44,083 nucleotides of DNA from assembly GCF_006345805.1 (NCBI RefSeq), contig NW_021834942.1:1-44083 (forward strand), given 5' to 3'. The notes under the pieces are model-generated. The model did no database searches. It was not told where the DNA came from and saw nothing but the letters and a program-made list of their open reading frames with translations. The position numbers and the translations under genes were made by a program. Shown in pieces: positions 252 through 39,491 of the stretch (positions are counted from its first letter, which is position 1; every line of letters starts with the position of its first letter). This DNA is from Octopus sinensis. Its lineage: Eukaryota.

Positions 252-358
252 AGCTCTAGATACGTTTTCTGTGGTGTTTACATTTTCAGTTAACTTCTTA
301 AAAGTCGAATATGCGTCCACGGTAAAAATCAGATGAAGTTCAAAGGAATGCGTCCAAC
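252..358 (-). CDS. Exon (phase 1 to 0), start of possible SEA-like domain: [36 protein letters not shown]
   Basis: Acceptor ttttcttttatgttcttgaatag, donor GCT|gtgagt; 107 nt = 2+35 codons, open and phase-compatible with exon 3876-3693. The SEA assignment is only a resemblance. Confidence 0.85.
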
Positions 359-15134: not shown

Positions 15135-15189
<55 letters not shown>

Positions 15190-15318
15190 ATTATTATTAT
15201 TAATATTATTATTATTAATATTATTATTATTATTATTGTGATTATTATTATTATTGTTGTTGTTGTTGTTGTTGCTGCTGTTGCTGTTATTGTTATTATT
15301 ATTATTATTATTATCATT

Positions 15319-15397
<79 letters not shown>

Positions 15398-18300: not shown

Positions 18301-18956
18301 ACGAGCATGGATGGCCATTTGTTGGAATATTGTGGGGTACGTCCAGCTCCTGTGTGTTGGGAAGATTTGATCCAGTAGCTGATTTTTCAATCAGAATTTG
18401 GTTCAATTTTCGGGTACGTGGTCTTTGTAATCCGCGCGATGACCAATGCGGTTTTTAGTTTGATTTGTTGACATTGAGCATGACGAGCTTCCACTCTTAC
18501 ATTAGGAGATGGATCTGTCAGTTTAGGGTTCTCTACACGTAAGCATTGCTCGTAGCGCAGCTTCTTATGGCTAGTAGATCTGTATTCGTCTGTATCTATT
18601 TTGTTGATAGTTTTATCTTCGAACATTTTTTCCTTCTCTTCCTTTTTTCCTCTCTCTTTCTTTCTTTCTCCTTCTTCCCCTTTTCCTTCCTTCTCTTCCA
18701 TTTCTCTTTTAAACTTATAAAAGGCTCACTCTGCCTGTATTAGTTCGAAATAATGAGAATAAAATACGAAGGAAAAAAAGGAAAAAAAAGGGATTATTAT
18801 TATTATTATCATTATTATTATGATGATTATTATTATTATTATTATTATCATTATTATTATTATTACAATTATTATTGTTGTTGTTGTTATTGTTGTTGTT
18901 GTTGCTGTTGTTGTTACTGCTATTGGTTTTATTATTGTTATCATTATTATTATTAC

Positions 18957-18998
<42 letters not shown>

Positions 18999-21358
18999 CA
19001 TCATTATTATTGTTATTATTATTATTATTCAGTGAGAGAGCAGTGCATTCCATCAAAGTAGCACTGGGGTAAATTATATGAAGCCCAGCATACCTATCAT
19101 GACTACCCGTCATTCAGAACTTTATCTGAATACTCTTCAGACAAGAGAAAAACTCCTGCAGCAGTTGACAACAAATGATGATTAATATAATTTCAGCAAG
19201 TGTATAGGAGTCACGACATTCATGTTCTTTCTTTCCATGTGTTAATAACAACAAAAAGAGAAATGGTTCTCGTGAAAACTGAAAAGTTGTTACATCGCTA
19301 CATTCTAATAGCCTACAGCTTGAATAAAAAAGTGTCACTTTAAATAAGAAGAAAATTCATAGTCACTTGAAATTACTTCATTATATCGTAGATTAGGCAT
19401 ATTTTGGTGTCGAAAATTTGATGGTTGTGATTTCAAAGTGTCTTTCAGAAGAGCAGTTTAGACGGAATGTTTTGGTGCTAGGATAATTGTTTTATTCTAC
19501 GTAACAATTGGTCTTAAAGGAATGCATGAACTGCGGTAGAAACAATAAAAGCAACGATTTGCACTTTCAGTTTCTGAGGCATACGACAGTGAAAGAATAC
19601 TCATAATAAACATGGGGGAAAATTAATAGCGATATATTTTTCGCAAATACAGGGTATCAGTTTAGAGACAGTAAAGGAAAAATTAACAGTTGCTCTTCAT
19701 GGATGATCTGAACCTTTTTAGCAAGAATAAAAAAAGATATTCTTTAAAACAAACTGTAAAACACTTCAGCAAGTTTATAGATATAGGATTTTTCATGGAT
19801 AAGTGTGCAGTATTAGTCATAAAACTGGACAAGTGGTCAGCAATAAAGTCTCCAATTACTAGATGACAAGACTTTAAAATCACTGAAACAATGCGAGAGT
19901 TATCTGTACCTAGGTGTACTAGAATCTCACAATGTACTAACTATAGAAATTAAAACGGAACTGGAGAAGGCGTAAATAAGAAAGGTGAGGAAGCTAATGA
20001 AATCATAGTCAAATGGGACGTATCTAGTGAAGGCTGTAAATACATGGCCACTAACGTTACGTGTATTTACATGGATTAAGTTAGATCAAACCAACTGTCA
20101 TGCAATTCAAAGCAGACTTTACAATGACTGAACACAATACTCGGAAATAATCATTTCGACTTATTAAAATGTAAACCAACACATCATTATTTATTGTCAA
20201 CTGCATTAAATATTTGTGAATTTGATAATCTTTCTTTATGCTATTAGATTTACAAAGTGTTAAACTTTTCCAAGAAATAAAGAGTATTATTGTACATACA
20301 TCTCATTTATGCTGGAAAGGTATGAGAAAGCGCCATCAAATTTTTGTAAACGGTTGTAGCTCAAATTTCTGAAAGAATCAAAGATAAGTTAAAATACGTA
20401 AAAATAAAAACAAACTGTTTTATACCGTAAAATACTTTCTAAATTTCTTTTTTCTCAAATGCAGGGTATCCGTTTAGAGACAGTTTAGAAACAGAAAAAG
20501 ACAGTGTGCGTGTGTGTGTGTGGGTGCGTGTGCACACACCACACACACACACACACACGCGCATACTGTCTTTTCTCTCTGTGTCTGTCTGTGCTATTTT
20601 CTCTCTCTTTTTCTCTCTGTCTCTCTCTCAATCTCTGTGTCACACACTTTTGTGTTTCGCTCACCCCATCAATGTGCTGATGGGGTAAAAGAAAACGCAT
20701 ACACACACATACACACAGACACACACACACAGTGTGTCTTCCTCAATGTTTCTGTATGACACTGTCTTTCTCTCTCTTTCTCTCTCTATCTGTGTCTCCC
20801 TGTGTGTCTCTCACTGCAACTCTTTTCAATTGCAATTCCTCGCACAAAACAATCCGTCGGCAGGAGCACTACGACACATAACAGTGGTATCAACAAGCTT
20901 CTCAATTGTTCGATGACTGTTCTCCAAGATGAGTTCATGAACTTTTGTGATGTTTTCATTCTTTCGGGAAGTCATTGGTCGCCCTGAACATAGTTATTTT
21001 TCAAGCGACAAGTGACCGTTCCTGGAGTGTGGAAACAACTTGTAAACTTGTGCTTTGCTCCTGGTAACGTCCTTGTCAGTTGTGTCAAATATGACAATTG
21101 TTTCGGCTGCCGCTTTCCCCAGCAGAAATCAGAATTTCCCGGATGCACGCTGTTCCTTCGTTTCAGCCATCGCAAAAAAATCAATAAACAGAGGAGAAGC
21201 ACTGCAAAACAACGATACATCACGTGGCAGTACGAGTCTAAATGACAATGCCGGTCGGCACACTGATGTCTGATAGTGGCTTCTAGCAGAGTAAGACTGA
21301 ACTACAACTGGTTTACCCAACAGAGATAATTTCGGTTACTTTTAGGTACCTCATGTAT

Positions 21359-22145: not shown

Positions 22146-22278
22146 GTTTCTGTATATATCTGTGAACATGTGTATATATATTTGCATGACTATAGTGTAT
22201 GACTATAAATTGTGTTGTGGTTGTGTATGTGTGTTCGTGTTTGTGTGTGAGTGTGTGTGTGTGTGTTTGTGTGTGTGA

Positions 22279-22325
<47 letters not shown>

Positions 22326-25105
22326 TCTGTATCTGTAAATCTGCCTCTCTGTCTGCTATTACAAAAATGTTATTGAGTGCAACGAAATTCAGTTTACAAT
22401 TCAGATTCGTCATATTTTTATTTATGTACAGATATATGTGTGTGTATATAAGCATTGTATCTTTGTGTTTGCATCTATGTTACCAACCTTAAGTGTTGCT
22501 CCTGCTACATCTGTATATTGAAGGTTTTATCAATGTTAATAAAATAGAAACAATTGTAGGCTTTATACTGAGCAAACTAATAAACGCCACTGTCTCTATA
22601 TTTATCGTTTCTTGTTAGAAAGTCTGTGTTTCTTTCCGAATTCTGCCATAGGATATTTCTATTTACTTATCATACAGGAGGAATTCACCTGGATGTGTAT
22701 TCTACTTCTTATTACTGGTGCCTAATTGTCGAATATTGTTAGATCTGAATCTCTGGATTCCCCTCGTTGTCCTACATGGCTTTTCCCTGTATTTGGGAAA
22801 ATTTGTCTTTAATTGTTAATTGTTACGTTGTTCACATTAATTTATATAAATCACATCACAAACGTAAACGACAAACACTCATTTTCATACCCGCGCGCAC
22901 ACACACACACACACAGAGAAAAAGTGAGCGTCTGTTTGAGAGGATGAAAGAGAGAGCGAAGATAGAAGGGAAGACAATATATATAGAAACATACAATTAG
23001 ATTAATAATATCAAAAAGATCAAACTTACACCCTCTCTAAATTGGTGAGACCCTCGAACGATCCATGTTCAATAATCGCGATTTTATTATTGGCTAGATT
23101 TCTGTAATTTGGGAGAGAATTGGTGAGAAATGGTATAAAAATGATTAGTCACACAATTTTAAATACGCATATGTCTAATCAACTGGATGTAGATGTAGAA
23201 GAAAAGGAAGTAGAAGTGCAAAAATTAGATGAAGATGAAGATAATGAGGAGTGAAGGTTATGATGATATTGATAATGATAACTTGTGACGCTATTGACTG
23301 ATGAGGAAGATGATGCGAATGATGATGTCGTTTATGATGATGATGATGAGATGATAAGGAGTGTGGTGTTGAGGACGGTTAAGCACGTTGATGGTCGCGA
23401 TCATGGCCATGATGCTTATGATGACAATGAAATTATAGAGGTACAAAAAACACAATTTGAAGCGGAGATTACAAGAAAATTATGAATTGAAATATGCATG
23501 TTTAAATCTGCCTCTCTGTCTGCAATTACAAAAATGTTATTGAGTGCAACGAAATTCAGTTTACAATTCAGATTCGTCATATTTTTATTTATGTATAGAT
23601 ATATGTATGTGTATATAAGCATTGTATCTTTGCGTTTGCATATATATTACCAACCCAAACTGTTGCTCCCGCTACATCTGTATATTGAAGGTTTTATCAA
23701 TGTTAATATAATAGAAACAATTGTAGGCTTTATACTGCGAAATCTAATAAACGCAACTGTCTCTATATTTATTGTTTGTTATCAAAATGTCTGAATTTTT
23801 CCGAATTCTGCCATAGGATATTTCTATTTACTTATCATACAGGAGGAATTCACCTGGATGTGTATTCTACTTCTTATTACTGGTGCCAATATTGTTAGAT
23901 TTGAATCTCTGGATCCCCTTGGTCGTCCTACATGGGATTTCCCCGTATTGGGGAATTTTGTCTTTAATCGTTAATTGTTACATTGTTCACATAAATTTTT
24001 TAAAATGACATCACAAACGTAAACCACAAACACTCAGATCCTTAATCATTTTCGTACCCGCATGTACACACACACAGACAAAGTGAACGTTTGTTAGAGA
24101 GGATGAAACAGAGAGTGAATATAGACGGGCAGACTTTATATGTAGAAACATACAATTAGATTAATAATATCAGGAAGATCAAACTTACAACTTATATAGA
24201 TTGGTGAGATCTTCGAACAATCCATGTTCAATAATCGCGATTTTATTATTGGCTAGTTTTCTGTAATTTGAGAGACAATTGGTGAGAAATGGTATAAAAA
24301 TGATTAGTCACACAATTTTAAATACGCATATGTCTAATCAACTGGATGTAGATGTAGAAGAAAAGGAAGTAGAAGTGCAAAAATTAGATGAAGGTGAAGA
24401 TAATGAGGACTGAAGGTTATGATGATATTGATAATGATGGCTTGTGACGCAGTTGACTAATGGTGAAGATGATGCTAACGATGATATCGTTTATGGTGAT
24501 GATAATGAGATGATAATGAATGTGGTGTTGAGCATGGTGATGACCGCGTTCATGGCCATGATGCTTATGACGACAATGAAATTATAGAGGTACAAAAAAT
24601 AGAATTGGAAGCGGAGATTACAAGAAAATTATGGAGTAAAATATACATATATATATTGTGATGGATATATATATATATGTCGGTCCCATAGGGGATAATG
24701 TTACAGTTGTTTATAGCTCCGGGATCATATCTCCGCTAACTGCCAAAACGACACAGCACTTGTGTCTTACTTGTATTTGCAAACTAATATCATGGTTCCC
24801 GTCTCTGGTTTTACGTAATAAACACAGGCCCTGATTTCTGGGTAGTAACTCGTCATCGAAACACGGGTGTGTGTGTATCACGTTAGGCTAGAGATGGCAA
24901 TGTTTTTTTCCTTTCACATATACTAATCAGACACAGACAGTGTGTCATTAGCCAATTGGAGAAGATGTTCTCCTGGGGCTATAAAAACTAGAAGCATCGT
25001 TCCCTATGGCACTGACACGTTTACGTGGTAAATATACTTTACGATTCCCTGCTACTACTGTTTACGTCTCACTCACAGATTTAATATTGCTTTCATATAT
25101 ATATC

Positions 25106-25137
<32 letters not shown>

Positions 25138-26890
25138 AAGGGGCGGGCAACAGGTTGCTTAGCCACATAGCGAAAAATTAGAAATAGCAGACAAAAACTG
25201 TTTATTTCTGTTTTCTACTATCAGGGGGGAAGGGCATAAGTTTTGATAAAAAATACAAAAATCGATTTCAGGTGAGTATGCGATCGATAGAGCTGTGGGA
25301 ACGTGCATTTGTAAAATCGTTTTTCTTGAAATAGAGTAAAGTCTATCTTTATTTCTTCTTTTGCTGGAGTCTGAAATTTGGGTTAAATCAGAGTTTCTGA
25401 AAGGGAAAGCCTATGAGACGGTCGCACAATATTTTTGAAAAACTTTGGTTTTAATATTTGACACCTCAGCACCGTCCATGGGATGGGGGGCGTTGTGTAT
25501 ATATATATATAAATGTATGTATGTATATATACACATATATATACATATAATATATATACACTATATATATATATATGTTTGTGACACATGTTTATTTACT
25601 ATATATATGTATGTGAGACTGTGTATGACTACAAATTGTTTTGTGGTTGTGTGTTGTATATGTGTGCGTGTGGTGTGTGTGCCTCTCTGTGGGTGTGAGG
25701 GAGAGAGAGAGCGAGCGACTGAGAATCTGCATTTTAAATCTGCCTCTCTGTCTGCAATTACAAAAATGTTATTGAGTGCAACGAAATTCAGTTTACAATT
25801 CAGATTCGTCATATTTTTATTTATGTACAGATATATGTGTGTTGTATATAAGCATTGTATCTTTGTGTTTGCATCTATGTTACCAACCTTAAGTGTTGCT
25901 CCGGCTACATCTGTATCTAAAGGTTTTTTAAATATTAATATAATAGAAACAATTGTAGGCTTATACTGAGCAAACTAATAAACGCAACTGTCTCTATATT
26001 TATCGTTTGTTGTCAAAATGTCTGAATTTTTCCGAATTCTGCCATAGGATATTTCTATTTACTTATCATACAGGAGGAATTCACCTGGATGTGTATTCTA
26101 CTTCTTATTCTGGTGCCTAATTGTCGAATATAGTTAGATCTGAATCTCTGGATTCCCCTCGTTGTCCTACATGGCTTTTCCCTGTATTTGGGGAAATTTG
26201 TCTTTAATTGTTAATTGTTACGTTGTTCACATTAATTATATAAATCACATCACAAACGTAAACGACAAACACTCATTTCATACCCGCACACACACACACA
26301 TACACACCACCAGAAAAAGTGAGCGTCTGTTAGAGGGATGAAGAGAGAGCGAAGATAGAAGGGAAGACAATATATGTAAAACATACAATTAGATTAATAA
26401 TATCAGGAAGATCAAACTTACAACTTATATAGATTGGTGAGACCTTCAAACAATCCATGTGAATAATCGCGATTTTATTATTGGCTAGATTTCTGTAAGT
26501 TGGAAGAGAATTGGTGAGAAATGGTATAAAAATGATTAGTCACACAATTTTAAATACGCATATGTCTAATCAACTGGATGTAGATGTAGAAGAAAAGGAA
26601 GTAGGAGTGCAAAAATTAGATGAAGTTGAAGATAATGAGAAGTGAAGATTATGATGATATTGATAATGATGGCTTGTGACGCAGTTGACTGATGGTGAAG
26701 ATGATGCTAATGCTGATGTCGTTTGTGATGATGAGATGATAATGAATGTGGTGTTGAGGACGGTGATGGTCGCGTTCATGGCCATGATGCTTATGACGAA
26801 AATGAAATTAAAGAGGTGCAAAAAAACAGAATTTGAAGCGGAGATAACAAGGAAAATTATGAAGTGAAAATATACATATATATATGTGAA

Positions 26891-26951
<61 letters not shown>

Positions 26952-27355
26952 GGTCCTTAGGGGATAATGCTACTGTGTTTATAGCCGGGATGATATCTCC
27001 GCTAGCTGCCAAAACGACACACCACTTGTGTCTTACTTGTATTTGCGAACTAATATTATGGTTCTCGTCTCTGGTTTTACGTAATAAACACAGGCCCTGA
27101 TTTCATGGTAGTAACTCGTCATCGAAACACGGGTGCGTGTGTATCACGTTAGGCTAGAGATGGCAATGTGTTTTTCTTTCACAAATATTAATCAGACACA
27201 GACAGTGTGTCATTAGCAAAGTGGAGAAGATGTCATCCTGGGGCTATAAAAACTAGAAGCATCGTTCCTATGGCACTGATACGTTTAGTGATAAATATAC
27301 TTTACGATTCCCTGCTACTACTGTTTACGTCTCACTCACAGGTTTAATATTGCTT

Positions 27356-27389
<34 letters not shown>

Positions 27390-27832
27390 GGGGCGGGCAA
27401 CAGGTTGCTTAGTCACATAGTGAAAAATTAGAAATAGCAGTCAAAAACTGTTTATTTCTGTTTTCTACTATCAGGAGGTGGGTATAAGTTTTGAAAAAAT
27501 TACAAAGATCGATTTCAGGTGAGCTGTGCGATTCGATAGAGCTGTGCGAAAGTGCATTTGTAAAATCATTTTTCTTGGAATAGAAAAAAGTCTATCTTTA
27601 TTCTTCTTTAGCTGGTGTCTGAAATTTGGGTTAAATCAGTGTTTCTCAAAGGGAGGGAGGCCGATGGGACGTTCGGACAAGTTTTTTGAAAAACTTTGGT
27701 TTTAGTTTTTGACACCTCAGCACCGTCCATGGGATGAGGTGGCCTTGTATATATATATATATATATGTAATATATATATATAATATATAATATATATTAT
27801 ATATAATATATATAATATATATTATTTATATA

Positions 27833-27890
<58 letters not shown>

Positions 27891-28039
27891 TATATTATAT
27901 ATAATATATATATATACACACATATGTATACATATATATAGATAAATATACATCTATATTATGTTTGTGACACATGTATATTTACATATATATATATGTA
28001 TGTCAGCATGTGTATGACTACAAACTGCTTTGTGGTGTG

Positions 28040-28071
<32 letters not shown>

Positions 28072-29713
28072 CGAGAGAGAGAGAGTCTGCATGTTTAAAT
28101 CTGCCTCTCTCTCTGCAATTACAAAAATGTTATTGAATGCAACAAAATTCAGTTTACAATTCAGATTCGTCATTTTTCATTTATGTATAGTTATATGTAT
28201 GTGTATATAAGCATTGTATCTTTGCGTTTGCATCTATATTACCAACCCAAACTGTTGCTCCCGCTACATCTGTATACTAAAGGTTTTATCAATGTTAATA
28301 AAATAGAAACAATTGTAGGCTTTATACTGCGAAATCTAATAAACGCAACTGTCTCTATATTTATCGTTTGTTGTCAAAATGTCTGAATTTTCCAGAATTC
28401 TGCCATAGGATATTTCAATTTACTTATCATACAGGAGGAATTCACTTGGGTGTGTATTCTACTTCTTATTACTGGTGCCTAATTGTCGAATATAGTTAGA
28501 TCTGAATCTCTGGATTCCCCTCGTTGTCCTACATGACTTTCCCCGAATCGGGAATTTTGTCTTTAATTGTTAATTGTTACGTTGTTCACATTAATTTTAT
28601 ATAAATCACATCACAATTCAAAACCACAAACACTCATATTCTTAATTATTTTCATACCCGCCCGCGCGCACACACAACACACGCGCACACACACACGCGC
28701 ATACACACAGACAAATTGAAAGTCTGATAGAGAGGATGAAAGAGAAAGCGAAGATAGAAGGGAAGACATTATATAGTAGAATATACAATTAGATTAATAA
28801 TATCAGGAAGATCAAACTTACAAATTGTATAATTTGGTGAGACCTACGAACGATCCATGTTCGATGATCGCGATTTTATTATTGACTAGAATTCTGTAAG
28901 TTGAAAAAGTATGTGAGAAATGGTATAAAAATGATTAGTCACACAAATTTAAATACGCATATGTCTAATAAACTGCATGTAGATGTGGAAGAAAAGGAAG
29001 TCGGAGTGCAAAAATTAGATGAAATGAAGAGAAATGAGGAGTGAAGGTTATGATGATATTGATAATGATGGCTTGTGACGCAGTTGACTGATGGTGACGA
29101 TGATGCTAATGATGATGTCGTTTATGATGATGATGATGAGATGATAATGAGTGTGGTGTTGAGCACGTTGGTGGTCGCGTTCATGGCCATGATGCTTATG
29201 ACGACAATGAAATATAAGAAGTACAAAATAGGATTGAAGCGGAGATTACAAGAAAAATATGAAGTGAAAAATACATATATATATTGTGAAGGATATATAT
29301 AATATATGTCGGTCCCATAGGGGATAATGCTACTGTGTTTATAGCTCCGGAATATCTCCGCTAGCTGTCAAAACGACACACACTTGTGCCTTACGTGTAT
29401 TTGCGAACTAATATCATGGTTCCCGTCTCTGGTTTTACGTAATAAACCAAGGCCCTGATTTCTGGGTAGTTAACTCGTCATCGAAACCTGGGGGTGTGGT
29501 ATCACGTCAGGCTAGAGATGGCAATGTTTTCCTTTCGCAATACTAATCAGACACAGACAGTGTGTCATTAGCCAAGTGGAGAAGAGATCTCCTGAGGCTA
29601 TAAAAAGAAGAAGCATCCTTCACTATGGGACTGATACGTTACGTGTAAATATACTTTACGATTCGTGCCACTACTGTTTACGTTCTCACAGATTTAATAT
29701 TGCTCTTATATAT

Positions 29714-29770
<57 letters not shown>

Positions 29771-30155
29771 GAGAGCGAGAGAGAGAGAGAGAGATAGATA
29801 TATAAAGGGGCAGGCACAGGTTGCTTAGCCACACATCCGAAAAATTAGAAATATCGGTCAAAAAACTGTTTATTTGTATTTTACTATCAGGGCATGCATA
29901 AGTTTTGAAAAAATTACAAAGATCGTTTCAGGTTTGTGTATGCGATCGATAAAGCCGTGGGAACGTGCATTTGCAAAAATCGTTTTTCTTGGAATAGAAA
30001 AAAGTCTATCTTATTTCTTCTTTTGCTGGTTGTCTGAAATTTGGGTTAAATCAGTGTTTCTCAAAGGGGAGGCCTAGGGACGGTCGGACATGTTTTTGAA
30101 ACACTTTGGTTTAATGTTTGACACCCCAGCACCGTCCATGGGAGGGGGGGGTTTG

Positions 30156-30190
<35 letters not shown>

Positions 30191-33100
30191 TACCGGAGTA
30201 AACACATAAATGTGAAACAAGGTGGAAAAAAGGTACTCAAATACCAGTGGTAGAGAGAATATGCTTTATTTAAAGCAGCAGAAAATTCAACAAACCTGTT
30301 ACTCTGAGTTTCACGTTGCCGTTCTTCGGACAGTTTTTGCTAGAATAGAACCGATACGTCAATTCTATCCAGACTAGTATAAACGCTACACCTTTGAAAA
30401 TTGACTTGTTTGATTGGTCCTTTACAAATAACTGTGAATTTTCGAGTGATAAACAAAAAGGAGCTCAAAAATATATATATCACCCAGGCATGTTTGAAGA
30501 CTGCCTAACAAAAATAGAAGAAGTCCTCACAAACCTTGAACAACACTTCATGGGTGACATTAACTTCCCCAATGTGGAATGGCCTGGGGCGGGGCAGATG
30601 CTCCCAGTGATGACACACCATCAGCAGGCACAGGCAGAGTCCCTGCTCCATCTCACAAATGCCTCTTTCATGGAGCAAATAGCTCTGCAACCAACAAGGG
30701 CAGATAATATACTTCACAAACAATATGTATATTATCCATAATGTTAAAGTGATGCCGACAATGAGCTCGGATCACAACATAATAGAGCTGTCTATGTATG
30801 GACCAAAAGCCCCCGTAGACACACAGCCTATACGAAGCATCCACCATCTCTCCAACTTAAACTTTCATAAAGCAAACTGGAAGTTGATTGCGAAAGAGAT
30901 CCTCAAACAGGATTGGCCTAAATGTCTCTCCACACTGGACATTAACATGAAGCACAAACACTTCATGTCCATAATACAAGCCATATGTGACAAATATGTC
31001 CCAGTGTACAGGGCCAGCACACACAAAAACAAAAACAGGATCCCTAGAGAAAGGAGGATTCTTATGAGACGACGGACAATGATTGCGAACCGCCTGAGCA
31101 AGCACACCAAAGGTGGTGAGAAGTCTCGGCTCGAGAGAATGCTAATGGAAATTGAGAAAGTCTGCATCAATCTCATGAAAAGGAGAGAGCAGATAAAGAA
31201 GTTTGGGTAATAGAAAATATAAAATCAAACCCTAAAGCTTTCTTTACGTTTGCCAAAGAGACAGCCACAGTGCACCAGAGAATAGGACCTCTCTTCCAAA
31301 AAGATGGCTCTCTCACAGGAAACCCCACGAGGATAAGTGAAATACTGAACGAACATTTCCAAAGTGTGTTCACTACATCTCTAGGACACAGGCAAGTAAA
31401 CAACCCAGAAGAATTCTTTGCCACTTTACCTGCGTCCAAAGAGGCAAAAATTGAGTACATCAACATTGAAGATGATGATATCACACTAGCCATAGATGAG
31501 ATTGACACAAACTCAGCTGCTGGACCTGATGGATTTCCAGCGATCCTTCTCAAATCGTGCAAACGAGCCCTTGCAAAACCGCTACAGCTTCTTTTTCAGA
31601 GCTTCCTTGCAAGTGGTAAGCTCCCAGTCAAATTGAAAGAGGGTGTAGTATGCCCTATCCATAAGGGAGGTAGCAGAGCAGATGCTGAAAATTATAGGCC
31701 TTTCTCTCTGACCTCACACATCAGCAAAGTCATGGAACGAATAGTCCGCAAGAAACTAATCATGTTCCTTGAAGAAAATGACTTGCTATCTGACACCCAG
31801 CATGGATTTCGGCCAGGCAGAAGCTGCTTAACAAAGCTCCTGCAACACTATGACTGGGTGTTAAAACAGCTACTAAATGGCTCAAATGTGGATGTAATAT
31901 ATCTCGACTTTGCAAAGGCCTTTGATAAAGTCGACCATGGTATGATCTGTCACAAACTGCGTGGTCACGGCATAGGCGGAAAACTTGGAGAGTGGCTGCA
32001 CAACTTCCTAAAAGACAGAAGACAGGCAGTTGTGAGCAATGGAGCCACTTCCAAGGAAACACCAATAACAAGCGGTGTTCCACAGGGCACTGTCTTGGGG
32101 CCACTGCTGTTCATAGTGGCCCTTTCAGACATGCCTTCAGTTGCTACGATGGCCACCCTTGCTAGCTATGCAGATGACACAAAAAATCCCACACAATACA
32201 AAACCCTGAAAATATTGCGCATCTGCAACAGGAGTTGGATAAAATATACAGGTAGGCGGAGGACAACAACATGCAGTTTAATGCAGGTACGTTCCAGGCC
32301 TTGCGTTACCGTCACACAAAGGTAAACGACGTGCAGACTGGATACACTGGCCCAGGAAGAATTGCAATCCCTGAGTCAAAATCAGTGCCTGACCTGGGCA
32401 TTGACATGAGCAATGATGCATCTTTCCAAGTGCATATTACTAATCTGGTGATAAAATGCAAATGGCCAGCTGGATGGATTCTCCGAACTTTCAGAACAAG
32501 AGAGAAGGAGACACTGATGGTCCTCTGGAAAACATTCGTCCTCAGCCGCTTGGACTACTGCTCCCAACTATGGTCACCACACAATATAAAACTAACAGCA
32601 GAACTTGAAGCAATTCAGAGAAGCTACAAAGAAGATTGTCTCAATGTAAAATATCAGCTACTGTGAAAGACTGAAAGTATTAAACCTCTTCTCCCTAGAG
32701 TGGAGGCGGGAGAGATATGCGGTGATATACACATCAGGAAAATCCTGGAGGGTCTTGTCCCAAACTTTGGCATTCAAAGTTACCCCAACCGCAGAACGGG
32801 GCGCCACTGCATGGTGCCAAAGATTCCAACATCACCATCAAAATACAGGTCCAGATACTGCAACAGCTTGGGTTTTAGAGGACCACAGCTCTTTAACATC
32901 CTCCCTAAATGCCTAAGACACTTACATGGTGTGGATGTGGGTTTCTTTAAAACTAAACTGGATCTCTTCTTGTCGGGAGTCCCAGATGAACCTACCACGA
33001 CAGGAGACGCAGATGCGGGCAGCAGTATCGAACTCCCTTGTTGATCAAGTGCCACGTATCAGAGGTGGATTCACATATTAGTGTAGCTCATTCAGCGGTG

Positions 33101-36100: not shown

Positions 36101-38720
36101 GAAGCGATTGCCTGTGAAAAAGGCTGAGCAACGTAGTCCTGAGCGGAAAATACAATTTAAAGCACTTCATAAGCAGCCTCAGAGAAAGCTTGGTTCTCTG
36201 TGATTAGATGTTGCTATTGCGAGGCTTTCGGTACGAGGGCAATACATCACGGAATTGGAGTGCGGTGGAGGATTTCCTGGCTTCACATGTATGTGATGAA
36301 AAACCTGATTTGGGTAGCACCACACCACCTCACTGTGACAAGTGGCCAGAAAGGTATAGGAAGTTACTGAAAAAGAAAGGTGTGTATGTCTTACTACTTT
36401 CATACTAATACAGAGTCTATGATTTCCTTTTGTTTGTCATCTAACCTTATGGTTACTCTTATTTTACGAGAGTGGCAGAAGCTTTTGCGCACTCTTACAT
36501 CCTCACGTGGGACGTATAGTTTATTTATATCAGCCTCTAGGAGATGCATGTAGTGTATCGTGACAGAATTGCTTTGTTTTGATTCGGTGATACACATCTC
36601 ATTCGTGGATCATTTTATGGTATCAAAGCTGCTGCCTAGAGGACCTATATATAAGGTATTCATTGCATCAGTCTTTTCTTCAAATGGAAATAGGTTTTTA
36701 TAGTGGCGGCTCATAAGAATGCGGTGTGACGCGAGAAATCATATCAGCACATTCAATAATAGAAGAGACTAGCCATAACAGTTTTAATATATCGACGGAA
36801 TTAAATGCAGGAAGATAAGGAAAAAAATGCGGTGTTTGGGGATTTCATGAAGGAGATGACCATAATGATGTTCAAAGGATATGAGTTTGTCATAAAATTT
36901 AAAATTAAATACACAGTATTTTACGTAGGATATGGGCGGTTCCGATTAGCGCTATCTTTTGAGTTGCTGCCATTTTGGGGTTTCCTAGTATCTGAGATGG
37001 TATGATTCAGGCCTTTTGCTATAATTCCTCGGGCAACTATGACAACAGGCATTGTTTTACTTCCACATTTTGCTAATTTCTATTTCAAGATCTTTACACT
37101 TGCTCAGTTTTGTAGGTTTTGATAGATACTTTTTTTGTCGATTGGGACAGTTTTAAATGAGGAGGCATGGTTTTTTTCCTGTAGTTTTTCTATATAATGC
37201 CTGTTCTATTCGCATCTATCTTTCTGTCACTTTGAATGGCAAGGTTCTAGAGGTTAAGATGCGATCATCTTCAAGAACTGGAGTGTGTTCGGGTCCCCAA
37301 CCGATTGTATCATGTGGCACGTGTATGTTTTTGCAAATTAACTAGTAAATATGATGTGCTGCTCAATCATGCCTGTTGAGATATTCTGTATGCACAAGAA
37401 GACTGCACATGGAGACAACATGATCAATGGTTTCATTTTGTTGTTTACAAGACATGCTGGGTGACTGCCGTTCTTTAATATGGTAGTTTCTTGTAGGTAG
37501 GCCTTGATCTTGAGCTGCTATATTAAATCCGTCTGTGTCTGATTTTAAGCTAGAAGACACTAAACATTGATGGGTAATGGCTTTATCCACATCGGCACTA
37601 TTAGCTCTCTTTGGGTATTTGCCATTGAGCTGTTTTCTTTGTCATTTATCTGTAAGAATATCTAAGTCAGATTCTTTGCATGTACTTTCATTCGCTTAGC
37701 TTTTTTCTGTGCTTGCTTCTAGTACGTTTAATTCTGGGAATTGTTGTATTTGGAATTCACTTAGATATTTCTTTGCATGCTTTGTTACTTTGTATGACAC
37801 TTTCTTGTTTTCGTGCTTTGAGACAAGTTTTAATATTCAGTCATGAGAGTTGTTTAGGTAGGTGTCACGGTCAATTGTGGCACTATCCATTGTTAATTCC
37901 AATTGTAAATGTTACGGCCACCCTCTTTTCTTTGCAGGTAAAATCGTTCTACATCTGTTTTAGGGTGGTGCATTCTATGCATTGTCAACAATTTTCGTAT
38001 TTTTCTGTCACGATTACATATTTCAATAATTGACCAGTTAATGATATTGAAACTGTAAGTCACGACTTGTACGGCATAGGTACTGATCACTTCGATCCTG
38101 TTTCTTGCATTCAGCTCTGTCTTGAATATTGCTTTTACCCTGCGATAATATTCATCACTGAATATTTGATCATGTCCACTTCAAATATCGATAAGTACAT
38201 GTATCTCTCCGCGTGTTCTAATTCCATTATGACATTCTGAGGGATGTTTCTGTCGTTTTTCCTTTGATAAATGTAGCTTTTGCCCATTTATCGAGGTAAA
38301 ATTGCAACGTGATATCATCAAAGAATTGTTTAGTATCTCCCGCCCAAGACGAAACACTAAAGGACTATATATTTATCCACACATTTCAGGAATAAATATA
38401 CATATGACTATATACGCACTTTTCACAATATACCAAACAGTGATGTAGAACACAAAGACTTATGTAAACACACATCGTCACACACAAACACGCTCAACTC
38501 ACACACACTCACATACATATATATATAGAGAGAGATAATGTGAGGTAGAGAAGGGCAACCGAAGGTTAAGAAAGTAAGATGGAAAGGTATTAAATTTCAG
38601 GAAATATATACTCAGGAATATAGTATGAACAAGACTGGTTCAACTTACAATTCACCTAAGTTTGGAAGATTTGCAAACGATCCATTTTCAATTTTCACGA
38701 TTGCATTACTGGAAAGATCT
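252..38720 (-). CDS. Multi-exon gene (5' and 3' ends outside window): extracellular LRR x>=6 - LRRCT - Ly6/uPAR (three-finger)-like - possible SEA-like protein
   Basis: Ten exons found by hand on the minus strand, all with AG acceptors and GT donors, and with splice phases chaining 2-2-2-2-2-2-2-1-0-1-0. Nine give a continuous stop-free frame: [48 protein letters not shown]/[71-nt copy]/[84 protein letters not shown]...[18 protein letters not shown]...CPGLL/PLCQYG...[25 protein letters not shown]...VSRA. About 10 N-x-S/T sequons. Confidence 0.9.
1089..1215 (+). mobile_element. Degenerate SINE family A
   Basis: ttcagtcccactgtgtggcacattgagcaagtgtctt...gtggatttgatagac matches the family A body; flanked by (TA)n. 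Confidence 0.7.
1264..1575. repeat. Inverted duplication (~65 bp arms) around a ~170 bp core
   Basis: atttaataaataaaacatatgcata...catacctacatctatatg (1264-1330) is the reverse complement of ~1510-1575. Confidence 0.75.
1911..2237. mobile_element. MITE-like element with 41-bp terminal inverted repeats
   Basis: 1911-1951 attaattacagaaatagacatagtctctgacagctgtttcg versus the reverse complement of 2197-2237 (3 mismatches); non-coding AT-rich interior. Confidence 0.7.
2275..2630. repeat. Compound (TA)n/(TACA)n/(CA)n microsatellite
   Basis: Directly visible; source of the spurious Y/I/M/C/V ORFs. Confidence 0.95.
2640..2805 (+). mobile_element. Degenerate SINE family A
   Basis: aattcagtcctactgcgtagcaccttaggcaagtgt...ggccgatcaaaccc...aaactgaaaaaagccc matches family A. 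Confidence 0.65.
3435..3648. repeat. Long near-perfect palindrome (~100-bp arms, 9-nt loop)
   Basis: The left arm ends ...cttcctgtcggcctt (3538), the loop is gacacattt, and the right arm starts aaggccgacaggaaac; pairing extends to atagagtgg/ccactctat with few mismatches. Confidence 0.92.
3693..3876 (-). CDS. Exon (phase 0 to 1), C-terminal half of Ly6/uPAR three-finger-like domain
   Basis: Acceptor cttcattgttacag, donor CCTG|gtaagt; 184 nt = 61 codons+1; ends in the LU signature CCRDNLCN. Confidence 0.92.
3907..4136 (-). mobile_element. tRNA-derived SINE (family B) with 15-bp target-site duplication
   Basis: Head AAGGCGGCGAGCTGGCAGAATCGTTAGC...GAGTTCAAATTCC and central GCCTTTCATCCTTTCGGGGGTCGAT; TSD taacagccatataat at 3892-3906 and 4137-4151. 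Confidence 0.9.
4720..7500 (-). mobile_element. Heavily degenerate Tx1/L1-clade LINE ORF2 (APE endonuclease to C-terminus)
   Basis: Translated fragments align by eye with ORF2 at 41641-44083 and 13140-13715, e.g. VAVYA...[44 protein letters not shown]...[11 protein letters not shown] and [10 protein letters not shown]; many stops and frameshifts. Confidence 0.8.
7991..8222 (-). mobile_element. tRNA-derived SINE (family B)
   Basis: High similarity to 3907-4136 over its full length. Confidence 0.88.
8337..8428 (-). CDS. Exon (phase 1 to 0), N-terminal half of Ly6/uPAR-like domain: (G)[30 protein letters not shown]
   Basis: Acceptor tattttatattctgtag, donor CTG|gtaaaa; 92 nt = 2+30 codons; supplies the LxCxxC start that the downstream CCxxxxCN exon needs, and both phases match. 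Confidence 0.9.
8560..8900 (+). mobile_element. Possible ancient Gypsy-type LTR retrotransposon RNase H relic
   Basis: [33 protein letters not shown] resembles the Gypsy RH motif YxxxELE...hxYLxGxxFTVxTDHKPL; very degenerate. Confidence 0.35.
9940..10140 (-). mobile_element. SINE (family C) with CR1-like 3' tail
   Basis: The minus strand ends ggcggtgccccagcatggccgcagcc...tgaaacaagtaaaaagag, matching the 3' end of the LINE at ~33097-33125. Confidence 0.75.
10195..10357 (-). mobile_element. SINE family A
   Basis: Near-identical to 19-180. Confidence 0.88.
10372..10532 (-). mobile_element. SINE family A (tandem with the previous copy)
   Basis: Near-identical to 19-180 and 10195-10357. Confidence 0.88.
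10648..10814 (-). CDS. Exon (phase 2 to 1), last LRR plus LRR C-terminal cap
   Basis: Acceptor gtcttataattacag, donor AAAG|gttagt; 167 nt = 1+55 codons+1; [14 protein letters not shown]...GKC...SQCK has the four-Cys LRRCT pattern (CxC...C...C). Confidence 0.9.
10880..11185 (-). mobile_element. 5'-truncated R4/Dong-like (REL) LINE 3' end
   Basis: [47 protein letters not shown] followed by a 3' UTR and a (TAA)n tail at 10846-10880. Confidence 0.85.
11267..13988 (+). mobile_element. Internally deleted Tx1-clade LINE (5'UTR-ORF1-ORF2 C-terminal remnant-3'UTR), flanked by (ATT)n on both sides
   Basis: ORF1 is homologous to 39712-41584 and joined at ~13140 directly to the ORF2 C-terminal Cys region ([15 protein letters not shown]...CPRC...ETVLH...C). 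AATAAA at 13977; (ATT)n at 11184-11266 and 13989-14235. Confidence 0.88.
11491..13143 (+). CDS. Tx1-like ORF1 (gag-like; RRM-like segment, degenerate zinc knuckle, poly-Q and Pro/Thr linker), 551 aa open frame
   Basis: ATG at 11491; [13 protein letters not shown]; [21 protein letters not shown] (CCHC with the second Cys replaced by Ser). Confidence 0.8.
   Translation: MSLKRAAGSSLLATPPPPQEEKILSAVPNRPFQAVKGKENITMERAEKQSVPNKNKKDGVSCDVILDFPPLPSINVIVPKGEEGNDMNKREINKETKIEENSKGFASAAKQISEEIQVSMEDIKMAKELLRKEGNSVFLNTPQQLIHDTNKKTIFYKVFEKKTKRLVNATPQQLEMALKPIWGQMSYVTRGKRFGTVEVRFPTEEQARAHAISPLQNEHLFLVPMYLGRKVQKITINTIPHKLNISWLVAAILYGIEDTATILNVRRVREKNWSGMGIEMLVQSQQENINAIHDFVILLDGIRLNVTVEGRKPKCFLSSSESHLKRDCPIQKKRMEEYSKRQQQQQQQQQQKQQKQHETPKAATLPTPSPAPRRTTPPPATTTTKPTPTPVPRRSTAAPSTATGAAAPPIPAEPTTFRPAAEADPSTIPLPDEEYSDCASSDSNNGEWSTVLPKKKRRRKQNDTQGKHEQIVLPNIKNNNNNTYSQQQTTITLSTPLLPLPLPQTQTHTDTITSINTRNQELVEYLKEKTSTNITDFVIPTQNTPPAHIL
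14240..15058 (-). mobile_element. 5'-truncated R4/Dong-like LINE with intact C-terminal CCHC and restriction-like endonuclease
   Basis: [47 protein letters not shown] and [11 protein letters not shown]; 3' UTR then (TAA)n; the 5' end fuses into (TAA)n at ~15058. Confidence 0.9.
15398..18792 (-). mobile_element. Near full-length R4/Dong-like LINE, frameshifted, lacking the REL domain
   Basis: N-terminal [11 protein letters not shown]...KLANVRRNI; RT motifs [41 protein letters not shown] and YMDDIKL; thumb and CCHC up to HVVSG, then ~50 nt and (TAA)n; (TAA)n also at the 5' side. Confidence 0.9.
19030..19110 (-). mobile_element. Short 3'-end fragment of another (TAA)n-tailed retroelement
   Basis: The minus strand ...ccccagtgctactttgatggaatgcactgctctctcactg runs into (AAT)n at 18795-19030; family recognised from memory only. 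Confidence 0.5.
19640..20080 (+). mobile_element. Degenerate R2/R4-type RT fragment
   Basis: [39 protein letters not shown] and LVKAVNTW across frameshifts. Confidence 0.7.
20300..20368 (-). CDS. LRR exon (69 nt, phase 2-2): [22 protein letters not shown](I)
   Basis: Acceptor ttatctttgattctttcag, donor GAGAT|gtatgt; joins the LRRCT exon to read INEIDLRNN. Confidence 0.92.
20815..21357 (-). mobile_element. Mariner (Tc1/mariner) transposon relic, 5' part
   Basis: From ATG 21170: [25 protein letters not shown]...[15 protein letters not shown]...SGRPMTS...[12 protein letters not shown]...EELQLKRVA (mariner HTH region); TIR-like TACATGAGGTACCTAAAAGTAACCGAA at ~21325-21357. Confidence 0.8.
21544..21821. 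mobile_element. MITE-like element with ~70-bp imperfect TIRs, TA-flanked
   Basis: ataatttacaagataagggcaaaag...ccaaatatgccgaaaaaaagacaaaaa versus its reverse complement at ~21752-21818. Confidence 0.75.
23030..23101 (-). CDS. LRR exon (72 nt, phase 2-2): [23 protein letters not shown](V)
   Basis: Acceptor ttctctcccaaattacag, donor GT|gtaagt; open frame. Confidence 0.92.
24189..24260 (-). CDS. LRR exon (72 nt, phase 2-2): [23 protein letters not shown](L)
   Basis: Acceptor ttgtctctcaaattacag, donor TT|gtaagt; open frame. Confidence 0.9.
26422..26492 (-). pseudogene. LRR exon copy with a 1-nt deletion (71 nt): pseudo-exon or assembly error
   Basis: ATT GAA CAT in sibling copies reads ATT CA CAT here; acceptor ctcttccaacttacag and donor gtaagt are intact. 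Confidence 0.75.
28822..28893 (-). CDS. LRR exon (72 nt, phase 2-2): [23 protein letters not shown](L)
   Basis: Acceptor tactttttcaacttacag, donor TT|gtaagt; open frame. Confidence 0.9.
30190..30395 (-). mobile_element. Probable Penelope-like element terminal (pLTR) segment
   Basis: Contains a minimal hammerhead on the same strand as the Penelope ORF at 34240-35105 and is separated from it by the CR1 insertion. Confidence 0.55.
30292..30337 (-). ncRNA. Minimal type I hammerhead ribozyme motif
   Basis: Minus strand: stem I CUGU / core CCGAAGA / stem II ACG-GCAA-CGU / GAAA / stem III CUC-A-GAG / UA / stem I ACAG; cleavage triplet GUA; U4C core variant. Confidence 0.75.
30397..33158 (+). mobile_element. 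5'-truncated CR1/L2-group LINE (APE C-terminus plus RT), frameshifted
   Basis: [70 protein letters not shown] and [11 protein letters not shown]; 3' tail (TAAGGATTT)2. Confidence 0.92.
33160..35105 (-). mobile_element. Penelope-like element relic: RT thumb, GIY-YIG endonuclease (~34240-34700) and long 3' region
   Basis: [38 protein letters not shown]...[16 protein letters not shown] and [11 protein letters not shown]...[13 protein letters not shown]. Confidence 0.88.
35110..35660 (+). mobile_element. Degenerate, internally deleted Tx1-like ORF2 fragment
   Basis: [29 protein letters not shown] and SREVVWW...LKFHLK match the RT and C-terminal motifs of the other Tx1 copies. Confidence 0.65.
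36900..38335 (-). mobile_element. Degenerate R4/Dong-like LINE (RT end, thumb, CCHC, REL)
   Basis: [53 protein letters not shown] and [12 protein letters not shown]. Confidence 0.85.
38649..38720 (-). CDS. LRR exon (72 nt, phase 2-2): [23 protein letters not shown](L)
   Basis: Acceptor gaattatctttcag, donor TT|gtaagt; canonical 24-residue extracellular LRR. Confidence 0.92.

Positions 38721-39423: not shown

Positions 39424-39491
<68 letters not shown>

What the first reader, a model, noticed from the sequence alone, without database searches (positions are those of the whole stretch)
22150..30150. Hidden LRR exon-cassette array: the 8 kb tandem repeat is an amplification of one 72-nt LRR exon
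Seen: each of four 1.2-2.4 kb repeat units contains a 72-nt (one 71-nt) minus-strand exon with a pyrimidine-rich AG acceptor and GTAAGT donor, encoding one 24-aa LRR in phase 2-2. The splice falls inside the LxxL|xLxxN beta-strand motif. The LRR exons end in TT/GT/AT and they and the LRRCT exon start with A or T, so every possible skip keeps the frame and a hydrophobic residue (L/V/I/F) at the conserved position. Inference: the ligand-binding solenoid can change length and recombine concave-face residues, by unequal crossing-over in the germline and/or combinatorial exon skipping. This would be a diversification mechanism for a cephalopod surface receptor, conceptually like modular LRR exon shuffling in other lineages.
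Basis: partly seen in the sequence, partly recalled or inferred. Interest (0 to 1): 0.88.

Follow-up and report, generated by a model that had tools for sequence, protein, structure and literature searches.

The report
Duplicated LRR exons in octopus receptor gene
An 8-kb stretch of an Octopus sinensis adhesion-GPCR gene is four tandem copies of a segment that each carry one 72-base leucine-rich-repeat exon (one copy is broken); this is the ordinary way LRR domains grow, and nothing here shows that it is used to generate receptor diversity.

Summary
Window 22336-30193 is four tandem units, and each carries a minus-strand LRR exon with a pyrimidine-rich AG acceptor and a GTAAGT donor, in phase 2/2. 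Every junction-codon claim is correct.

The window is Octopus sinensis contig VCDQ01010816.1. The exons lie inside a gene whose RefSeq model (XP_036355800.1) joins E38, E24, E23 and the LRRCT exon, and omits E28, E26 and E20. Orthology and paralogues place the gene in the octopus-specific family LRRNT-LRR-LRRCT-Cys-rich-GPS-7TM, the adhesion-GPCR "group 3" expansion of Ritschard 2019.

The 71-nt copy (E26) is a frameshifted exon. Including it gives TAA at the next junction.

Sister species O. vulgaris keeps only one of the four exons, plus remnants that fit a 4.3-kb deletion out of repeat register. The array therefore predates the species split, and copy number differs between species.

Between the two species the exons diverge at least as fast as the introns (pN/pS about 0.8), but they spare cysteines and LRR core positions.

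No RNA evidence was available, so combinatorial skipping remains speculation. Single 72-nt phase-2 LRR exons, their duplication and their skipping are already described for Slit, gonadotropin receptors, NLRs and brown-alga ROCO genes. Verdict: real, a new member of a known kind, moderate interest.

The parts
22336..30193 (-). Tandem array of four units in gene order U4, U3, U2, U1. U4, U3 and U2 are each a ~0.95-kb 'extra' segment plus a ~1.15-kb exon-bearing core. U1 is core only.
   Evidence: Cores are 87-89% identical to U2. Extra segments are 82-88% identical.
28822..28893 (-). E28: 72-nt LRR exon ([25 protein letters not shown]). It is the orthologue of the only copy kept in O. vulgaris. 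The RefSeq model omits it.
   Evidence: L001 97155-97226; 4/72 nt differ; AG and GTAAGT kept.
26422..26492 (-). E26: 71-nt copy with a 1-nt deletion. Its splice sites are intact. Including it gives TAA at the next junction, so it is a pseudo- or poison exon.
24189..24260 (-). E24: 72-nt LRR exon ([23 protein letters not shown]). It is used in RefSeq model XP_036355800.1.
23030..23101 (-). E23: 72-nt LRR exon ([23 protein letters not shown]) that ends in GT. It is used in the RefSeq model.
38649..38720 (-). E38: upstream 72-nt LRR exon of an older type ([23 protein letters not shown]), with the same phase. It is the first exon of the partial RefSeq model. This type has eight copies in O. vulgaris.
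20300..20368 (-). E20: 69-nt LRR exon ([22 protein letters not shown]) that ends in AT. It is homologous to the conserved last LRR of paralogues. It is intact in both species but left out of both gene models.
10648..10814 (-). LRRCT-like cap exon (167 nt; starts with T; four Cys: MMCGC...GKC...SQC).
   Evidence: There was no Pfam LRRCT hit, but the AlphaFold pLDDT is 61-89.
8337..8428 (-). First exon of the Cys-rich module ([30 protein letters not shown]).
3693..3876 (-). Second exon of the Cys-rich module (...[16 protein letters not shown]).
252..358 (-). Last exon of the partial RefSeq model that falls in the window ([35 protein letters not shown]). The contig ends before the GPS/7TM part of the gene. 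Coordinates are approximate.
19517..19585 (-). Counterpart of the 23-aa terminal exon of O. vulgaris model CAI9743665.1. Its acceptor CACAG reads CACTG here, so it is probably not a real exon.

Best explanation
The 8-kb repeat is a germline tandem segmental duplication inside the LRR-coding part of an octopus-specific adhesion GPCR gene. The gene's architecture is LRRNT, single-exon LRRs, LRRCT, a Cys-rich module, GPS and 7TM.

One ancestral 72-nt phase-2/2 LRR exon was copied together with about 1-2 kb of intron, giving four units. Because such exons are frame-symmetrical and split inside the beta-strand codon, each intact copy that is spliced in adds one 24-residue turn to the solenoid. No special mechanism is needed for this.

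Three copies are still intact. One has a 1-nt deletion and can only be skipped or yield a premature stop.

The array is older than the O. sinensis / O. vulgaris split. O. vulgaris later lost three of the four exons in one 4.3-kb deletion, so the sister species differ in how many LRRs the gene can encode.

Shown here: the duplication, the exon anatomy, the frameshift, the gene identity, the between-species difference, and scaffold-preserving fast evolution of the ectodomain exons.

Inferred: that E24 and E23 (and possibly E28 and E20) are really spliced into mRNA, and that E26 is skipped.
For: Repeat and exon anatomy.

Identity of the sequence. The window is the reverse complement of contig VCDQ01010816.1 of GCA_006345805.1. 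RefSeq protein XP_036355800.1 / XP_036355822.1 matches window exons E38, E24, E23, LRRCT, the two Cys-rich exons and one more at 98-100% per exon.

Receptor family.
- In O. vulgaris the next gene model downstream on the same strand is 899 aa with GPS and 7tm_2. Its start coordinate falls at the MMCGC of the LRRCT exon.
- Octopus paralogues carry LRR_8, this LRRCT, the Cys-rich module, GPS and 7tm_2 in single models. One also has a Death domain.
- This matches octopus-specific aGPCR group 3 of PMC6408891.

Copy-number difference.
- Only one [12 protein letters not shown] exon exists in the 118-kb O. vulgaris locus.
- Its unit-B remnants are at orthologous-level identity to the U1 core (93.9%) and the U3 extra segment (94-95%), but only 84% to the U2 extra segment.
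- The deletion junction is clean and out of repeat register.

Constraint.
- Among the copies, all 8 variable residues avoid the 8 LRR core positions (p about 0.013).
- Between species, six orthologous exons (656 nt) have intact splice sites and 0 indels, against 4.0 expected from the intron rate (P=0.018).
- The same exons show 27 residue changes, none at 40 Cys or LRR-core positions (P=0.0025).

Recent LRR duplication recurs in paralogues, where LRR pairs are 87-91% identical within one protein.
Against: - No transcript data were available, so use of any of the four exons rests on one Gnomon model whose evidence level I cannot see.
- That model omits E28. The O. vulgaris model omits the orthologue of E28.
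- The exons are not more conserved than flanking intron among units: 25% variable columns against 20% in the pooled 400-nt flanks (up400 plus dn400).
- pN/pS among copies is 0.3-1.0 on only 23 codons. Neutral decay of the extra copies is therefore not excluded.
- The dating argument assumes no gene conversion among units.
- The O. vulgaris state comes from a single assembly.
Confidence: 0.8

Rival explanations
1. One reading: the array is a diversification device. Regulated combinatorial skipping of the frame-neutral LRR exons, and/or frequent unequal crossing-over, produces receptors with different solenoid lengths and concave faces.
For: - All skips among intact exons keep the frame and a hydrophobic core residue.
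- The two independent gene models leave out different subsets of intact LRR exons. XP_036355800.1 omits E28 and E20. O. vulgaris CAI9743665.1 uses 5 of 8 E38-type exons and omits the E28 and E20 orthologues.
- E26 must be skipped for any productive mRNA, so some skipping is obligatory.
- The ectodomain exons evolve at least as fast as the introns while sparing scaffold residues.
- The family is reported to be under positive selection and expressed in the axial nerve cord, suckers and skin.
- Alternative splicing of shuffled 72-bp LRR exons is documented in brown-alga ROCO genes.
Against: - No RNA evidence was obtained.
- Omitted exons in automatic models are as easily annotation noise.
- The O. 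bimaculoides paralogue isoforms X1-X3 have identical LRR regions.
- The copies differ at only two concave-face positions.
- The species difference arose by a deletion out of repeat register, not by unequal crossover.
- Units are 10-18% diverged, so turnover is slow.
- The phase symmetry is generic to this exon class.
Confidence: 0.12
2. Decaying by-product: only the ancestral copy, or none of the four, is functional. The extra units are neutral intronic pseudo-exons on their way to loss.
For: - E26 already has a frameshift.
- O. vulgaris lost three copies and kept the rest of the gene's sampled exons intact.
- The exons are no more conserved than intron.
- pN/pS reaches 1.0 for some pairs.
- No predicted protein in the 5.8-billion-sequence collection other than XP_036355800.1 contains the [12 protein letters not shown] repeat.
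Against: - The RefSeq model uses exactly two of the derived copies, E24 and E23.
- All four keep the AG acceptor and a GTAAGT donor, and three keep the open frame, at 10-18% unit divergence.
- Replacements avoid LRR core positions (p about 0.013).
- The 100 nt upstream of each exon is unusually conserved among units (p=0.007).
Confidence: 0.25
3. Assembly artefact: the four units result from mis-assembly of one unit.
For: The sequence is a small unplaced contig from a 2019 assembly. The second contig is 100% identical over the array, so it is not an independent witness.
Against: - Units differ by 10-18% and by indels.
- O. vulgaris retains remnants that match U1 on one side and U3 on the other at orthologous identity, which requires at least three distinct units in the ancestor.
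Confidence: 0.02

Closest known systems
Modular single-LRR exon genes: Slit1-3 (Little et al. 2002, cited in PMC6642158), gonadotropin/LGR receptors, human NLRs (PMC6642158)
   Same: One LRR per short exon (72 bp in Slit). All introns are in the same phase (phase 2 in gonadotropin receptors, as stated in PMC11378527). The LRR domain grew by duplication of a prototype exon. In-frame exon skipping is possible and, for NLRP3, is shown to occur.
   Different: Here the duplication is recent enough that whole intron-plus-exon units are still alignable. Copy number differs between sister species, and one copy is already broken. The host gene is an adhesion GPCR, not Slit, LGR or NLR.
Brown-alga ROCO / LRR 'exon shuffling' genes (Zambounis 2012; Teng 2024, PMC11378527)
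   Same: 72-bp phase-2 LRR exons are amplified in tandem. Variable residues sit between conserved core positions. Alternative splicing of LRR exons has been proposed as a way to diversify a receptor repertoire.
   Different: In the algae, alternative transcripts are documented and arrays hold up to 16 or more exons. Here there are four copies and no transcript evidence. The lineage and the protein family are unrelated.
Octopus-specific adhesion GPCR expansion 'group 3' (Ritschard et al. 2019, PMC6408891)
   Same: This is the family the gene belongs to: GPS plus 7tm_2 with N-terminal LRRs, and a Death domain in one member. The genes are clustered, show positive selection, and are expressed in axial nerve cord, suckers and skin.
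   Different: In the passages I read, that paper treats whole-gene duplication. It does not mention intragenic LRR-exon amplification, the LRRCT plus Cys-rich module, or copy-number differences between species.
Lamprey/hagfish VLR cassette assembly and Dscam1/protocadherin exon arrays
   Same: There is a conceptual resemblance only. In each case a repeated set of modules could diversify a surface receptor.
   Different: VLR cassettes lack splice sites and are assembled somatically by gene conversion. Dscam1 uses mutually exclusive exon clusters, and protocadherins use per-exon promoters. The octopus units are ordinary cassette exons with canonical splice sites in one transcription unit, and no selection mechanism is evident.

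Membership tests
Extracellular 'typical' LRR domain (Pfam LRR_8 / LRR clan) | Repeated 24-residue LxxLxLxxNxLxxLxxxxFxxLxx motif recognised by LRR profiles. | tested here: met
   LRR_8 at E=1.6e-35 on the concatenated window exons. AlphaFold pLDDT is 83-95 with one short beta strand per repeat.
Extracellular 'typical' LRR domain (Pfam LRR_8 / LRR clan) | Cysteine caps: LRRNT upstream and LRRCT downstream. | tested here: inconclusive
   The LRRCT-like exon has four Cys and 24 octopus homologues in the same position, but no Pfam LRRCT hit even at E<=5. LRRNT is seen only in the O. vulgaris orthologue, below the Pfam cut-off (20.7 against 25.8 bits). It lies outside the window.
Adhesion GPCR (octopus-specific group 3, 'ADGRG6/GPR126-like') | GPS/GAIN autoproteolysis motif and a family-B 7TM domain on the same polypeptide as the adhesive N-terminus. 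| tested here: inconclusive
   Neither is in the window, because the contig ends first. In O. vulgaris the adjacent same-strand model (899 aa) has GPS and 7tm_2 and starts inside the LRRCT exon. Paralogues P0013 and P0023 have LRR_8, GPS and 7tm_2 in one model. No cDNA links the two halves for this gene.
Modular 72-nt phase-2 LRR exon genes (Slit / LGR / ROCO type) | Each LRR is on its own ~72-nt exon, with the same intron phase on both sides. | tested here: met
   E38, E28, E24 and E23 are 72 nt and E20 is 69 nt, all phase 2/2. Nine such exons occur in the O. vulgaris locus.
Modular 72-nt phase-2 LRR exon genes (Slit / LGR / ROCO type) | Documented alternative inclusion of LRR exons. | not testable with these tools
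   No RNA-seq or cDNA data were accessible. The gene models disagree on exon use. The O. bimaculoides paralogue isoforms do not differ in their LRRs.
Somatic LRR cassette assembly (VLR-like) | Germline cassettes without splice sites flank an incomplete gene and are joined by somatic gene conversion. | tested here: not met
   Every unit has a canonical AG acceptor and a GTAAGT donor inside a normal intron-exon series.
Mutually exclusive / stochastic exon-array systems (Dscam1, clustered protocadherins) | Arrays of alternative exons with a selection mechanism: docking/selector RNA pairing or per-exon promoters. | not tested
   I did not search for selector elements. The only hint is that the 100 nt upstream of each exon is more conserved among units than the remaining flanks.

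The most novel reading that the evidence does not exclude
Octopus group-3 adhesion GPCRs, which are expressed in the axial nerve cord, suckers and skin, may use arrays of recently duplicated, frame-neutral LRR exons as alternatively spliced cassettes. On this reading a frameshifted copy acts as a poison exon that couples splicing choice to NMD. Individual cells would then display receptors of different LRR length and surface, giving a splicing-based recognition code alongside the expanded octopus protocadherins.
Probability: 0.1. Interest if true: 0.75.

Novelty: new member of a known kind. Interest (0 to 1): 0.36.

Why it matters
This is a clean, datable example of how an LRR ectodomain changes length: an exon-plus-intron tandem duplication, decay of one copy, and loss of three copies in a sister species. 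It sits in a receptor family that expanded only in octopuses and is thought to serve their peripheral nervous system.

It also exposes annotation problems. In O. vulgaris the gene is split into an "IGFALS-like" LRR protein and an "ADGRG6-like" receptor. In O. sinensis it is a partial "egg-6-like" model.

If transcript data showed regulated use of the copies, it would add an animal case to the LRR-exon splicing diversity described in brown algae and NLRs. Without such data it is ordinary gene-structure evolution.

Tried and rejected
- A strict LRRCT regular expression found nothing. The cap exon was found later by reading the sequence.
- A word-indexed protein search with the 56-aa LRRCT exon returned nothing. 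The exhaustive HMMER search then found 24 relevant hits. Its top hit, P0003, is a 7883-aa repetitive protein with no LRRs and no aligned stretch reported, and I discarded it as spurious.
- I first took the O. vulgaris model's hydrophobic 23-aa last exon as the gene's end. I rejected this because its acceptor AG is absent in O. sinensis, and because an LRRCT exon and receptor exons follow.
- The idea that the repeat unit is a transposable element is not supported. It occurs only in the array and at the orthologous place in O. vulgaris.
- The second O. sinensis contig was examined for copy-number variation. It is 100% identical over the array and so is uninformative.
- RefSeq isoforms of an O. 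bimaculoides paralogue were checked for LRR skipping. They differ only at the C-terminus.
- Pfam does not recognise the Cys-rich module or the LRRCT. AlphaFold modelled the Cys-rich part at pLDDT below 50, so I ran no fold search, and the Ly6/uPAR-like reading stays a motif-level impression.
- Exon-versus-intron conservation and pN/pS among the four copies have too little power to separate selection from neutrality.
Full report
**1. What is in the sequence**

Repeat finding gives four-copy direct-repeat families with start-to-start spacings of about 1159, 2232 and 2400 nt between 22.3 and 30.2 kb. Splitting a unit into a 1.14-kb core and a 0.98-kb extra segment gives this map:

| Unit | Core | Extra segment |
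|---|---|---|
| U1 | 22336-23484 | none |
| U2 | 23500-24640 | 24660-25640 |
| U3 | 25733-26868 | 26935-27868 |
| U4 | 28093-29268 | 29288-30193 |

Cores are 87-89% identical to U2, and extra segments are 82-88% identical. The unit occurs nowhere else in the window. In the 118-kb orthologous O. vulgaris locus it occurs only at the orthologous place, apart from weak (~69%) matches of the exon region to the older E38-type units. It is therefore not a dispersed transposable element.

A scan of the minus strand for AG|60-90 nt|GT[AG]AG[TA] with an open frame finds one exon-like segment per unit:
- 28822-28893 (72 nt)
- 26422-26492 (71 nt)
- 24189-24260 (72 nt)
- 23030-23101 (72 nt)

Each has a pyrimidine-rich tract ending in TTACAG and the donor GTAAGTTTG. 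The 72-nt copies read [23 protein letters not shown] from exon base 2. Both flanking introns are therefore phase 2, and the split codon is position 4 of LxxLxLxxN.

**2. The rest of the gene**

More single-LRR exons of the same phase lie outside the finding:
- E38: 38649-38720, 72 nt.
- E20: 20300-20368, 69 nt, ending in AT.

It starts with T and carries four cysteines. Two Cys-rich exons follow at 8337-8428 and 3693-3876. Concatenated, the LRR exons hit Pfam LRR_8 at E=1.6e-35.

**3. Where the window comes from and what the gene is**

The window is the reverse complement of contig VCDQ01010816.1 of Octopus sinensis assembly GCA_006345805.1.

RefSeq protein XP_036355800.1 is named "leucine-rich repeat-containing protein egg-6-like, partial". 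It matches window exons E38, E24, E23, LRRCT, the two Cys-rich exons and one further exon at 98-100% per exon. It leaves out E28, E26 and E20.

The O. vulgaris chromosome assembly holds the orthologous locus. Identity is 92-97% including gaps, and mismatches alone are 2.6-3.8%. There the LRR part is annotated as a 190-aa "IGFALS" protein spanning 97.6 kb.

The next model on the same strand is 899 aa with GPS and 7tm_2. Its start coordinate falls at the MMCGC of the LRRCT exon. The 190-aa model ends in a 23-residue exon whose acceptor CACAG reads CACTG in O. sinensis. I conclude that the two O. vulgaris models are halves of one gene.

An exhaustive HMMER search with the LRRCT exon finds only Octopus proteins among those I looked up. 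Several carry LRR_8, this LRRCT, the Cys-rich module, GPS and 7tm_2 in one chain, and one has a Death domain.

This matches the octopus-specific adhesion-GPCR expansion "group 3" of Ritschard et al. 2019. That group has LRRs in 5 of 22 members and a Death domain in one, is expressed in axial nerve cord, suckers and skin, and shows signatures of positive selection. So "cephalopod surface receptor" is right.

**4. The frame argument, and the broken copy**

All exon ends (TT, GT, AT) combined with all exon starts (A, or T for LRRCT) give L, F, V or I. In the AlphaFold model of the RefSeq product, the junction codons (residues 24, 48 and 72) sit inside the short beta strands.

E26 is the exception. 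It has a 1-nt deletion relative to the other copies. After it, the leftover T plus the AA that begins E24, E23 or E20 makes TAA.

The deletion is not in a homopolymer. It is also present in the second contig, but that contig is 100% identical over the whole array and is not an independent witness.

E26 keeps splice sites as good as those of its neighbours. A productive mRNA must therefore skip it.

**5. History of the array**

The O. vulgaris locus has only one [12 protein letters not shown] exon, at L001 97155-97226. It is the orthologue of E28 and differs at 4 of 72 nt.

O. vulgaris also keeps a remnant of a second unit, in two pieces:
- A 0.39-kb core piece. It lies within a 93.9%-identical orthologous alignment to U1 and its downstream flank, and it is 92% identical to U2.
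- A 0.84-kb extra piece. It is 94-95% identical to U3's extra segment but only 84% identical to U2's.

Both pieces match different O. sinensis units at orthologous-level identity. The simplest history is that the four-unit array already existed in the common ancestor. O. vulgaris then lost window-equivalent 22743-27053, which contains E23, E24 and E26, in one deletion.

The junction is clean and not in repeat register. It was therefore not an in-register unequal crossover. This dating assumes no gene conversion among units.

O. vulgaris also has a 5.4-kb insertion with a mariner-like fragment at the equivalent of window ~27.8 kb.

On a larger scale, window 35098-42636 (E38 plus LINE sequence) matches at least seven places in the O. 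vulgaris locus at 90-97% identity. Eight intact E38-type exons occur there, so the whole LRR region was built by nested tandem duplication.

Paralogues contain LRR pairs that are 87-91% identical within one protein. Recent LRR-exon duplication is therefore a family habit.

**6. Are the copies under selection?**

Among the four units plus the O. vulgaris copy, the exon is not more conserved than its flanks. It has 25% variable columns, against 18% (up400) and 23% (dn400) in the 400-nt flanks. pN/pS among copies is 0.3-1.0 on 23 codons. That comparison has no power.

Two weaker signals point to constraint:
- All eight variable residues avoid the eight LRR core positions (p about 0.013).
- The 100 nt upstream of the exons is more conserved among units than the remaining flanks (p=0.007).

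The between-species comparison covers six orthologous exons, 656 nt in total:

| Measure | Result |
|---|---|
| Nucleotide divergence in exons | 5.6% |
| Mismatches in aligned intron | 2.6-3.8% |
| pN/pS | 0.79 |
| Splice sites | intact in both species |
| Indels in exons | 0, against 4.0 expected from the intron rate (P=0.018) |
| Residue changes | 27, none at 40 Cys or LRR-core positions (P=0.0025) |

The ectodomain is thus evolving fast on its surface while keeping its scaffold. This fits the positive selection reported for the family. It also means that the absence of exon conservation in the array is the norm for this gene.

**7. What is not shown**

I had no RNA data.

The gene models omit different intact exons. 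The O. sinensis model omits E28 and E20. The O. vulgaris model uses 5 of 8 E38-type exons and omits the E28 and E20 orthologues. This is compatible with exon skipping, but equally with annotation noise.

RefSeq isoforms X1-X3 of an O. bimaculoides paralogue have identical LRR regions and differ only at the C-terminus.

Among the copies, only two concave-face positions vary.

**8. Comparison with what is known**

Several precedents are published:
- One LRR per 72-bp exon, all introns in phase 2.
- Growth of the domain by duplication of a prototype exon.
- The resulting potential for in-frame skipping.

These are described for gonadotropin receptors and for brown-alga ROCO genes, where alternative transcripts are documented. 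They are also described for Slit genes and human NLRs.

The octopus array is a recent and unusually legible instance of the same process in a different receptor family. It is not VLR-like, because the cassettes have canonical splice sites. No Dscam- or protocadherin-type selection mechanism is evident.

**9. Verdict**

- Observation: confirmed.
- Interpretation: partly supported. The duplication, modularity, surface receptor and germline copy-number change hold. A dedicated diversification mechanism is not shown.
- Novelty: new member of a known kind.
- Interest: moderate-low (0.36). It would be raised mainly by transcript evidence for regulated use of the copies.

Noticed in passing
window 8337-8428 and 3693-3876 (minus): A ~95-residue Cys-rich module lies between LRRCT and the GPS region and is conserved across the octopus family (LQCQTCS...CP...C...SCSTY..C...C...[11 protein letters not shown]). 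Its C-terminal CCxxxxCN motif recalls Ly6/uPAR three-finger domains, from my own knowledge. There is no Pfam hit, and AlphaFold pLDDT is below 50.
   Followed up: partly
L001 10001-107623 and 109392 onward; window 19517-19585: O. vulgaris annotation appears to split one gene into an 'IGFALS' LRR protein (CAI9743665.1) and an 899-aa GPS/7tm_2 protein that starts inside the LRRCT exon.
   Followed up: partly
window 35098-42636; L001 15-96 kb: A higher-order 4-7.5-kb repeat made of the E38-type LRR exon plus LINE sequence has at least seven further copies in the O. vulgaris locus, at 90-97% identity to the window. The whole LRR region was therefore built by nested tandem duplication.
   Followed up: partly
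window 20300-20368 (minus): E20 is one codon short (69 nt). It is clearly homologous to the conserved last LRR of paralogues (NQIQxxEDGAFLFLP) and is intact in both species, yet it is left out of both gene models.
   Followed up: partly
window: ~100 nt upstream (gene sense) of each array exon, e.g. 23102-23200, 24261-24360, 26493-26592, 28894-28993: The intron stretch just upstream of each duplicated exon is more conserved among units than the remaining flanks (10% against 22% variable columns, p=0.007) and than the exon itself (p=0.012). It could be a splicing-regulatory element or a gene-conversion tract.
   Followed up: no
L002 (VCDQ01005335.1) versus the whole window: The O. sinensis assembly holds a second contig that is colinear with the whole window at 99.8% identity and carries the same RefSeq protein (XP_036355822.1). 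It is a haplotig or a redundant contig.
   Followed up: yes
window 30349-33041 (+), 39709-44083 (+), 14335-18454 (-), 11410-13712 (+): Intronic LINE-type retroelement remnants with reverse-transcriptase and endonuclease ORFs (Pfam RVT_1, Exo_endo_phos). One runs into an (AAT)n tract translated as poly-Asn. About 7-8 kb at window 10.9-18.8 kb has no counterpart in O. vulgaris.
   Followed up: partly
window 23282-23482, 24438-24584, 26670-26864, 29069-29299 (+): Each unit carries a plus-strand acidic open frame (…[20 protein letters not shown]…) opposite the intron upstream of the LRR exon. It looks like a GAT/GAC-rich low-complexity tract rather than a gene.
   Followed up: no
L001 98195-103635: O. 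vulgaris has a 5.4-kb insertion at the place of the window's TA microsatellite (~27.8 kb). It contains a mariner-like transposase fragment (…WTISVRQCQWWFQKSRA…), identified only by eye.
   Followed up: no
Orthologous exons, window versus L001 (E38, E28, E20, LRRCT, Cys-rich exons): Exon substitution divergence between O. sinensis and O. vulgaris (5.6%) exceeds the aligned intron mismatch rate (2.6-3.8%; p=2e-5 to 0.014). This suggests positive selection or gene conversion from paralogues in the ectodomain.
   Followed up: partly
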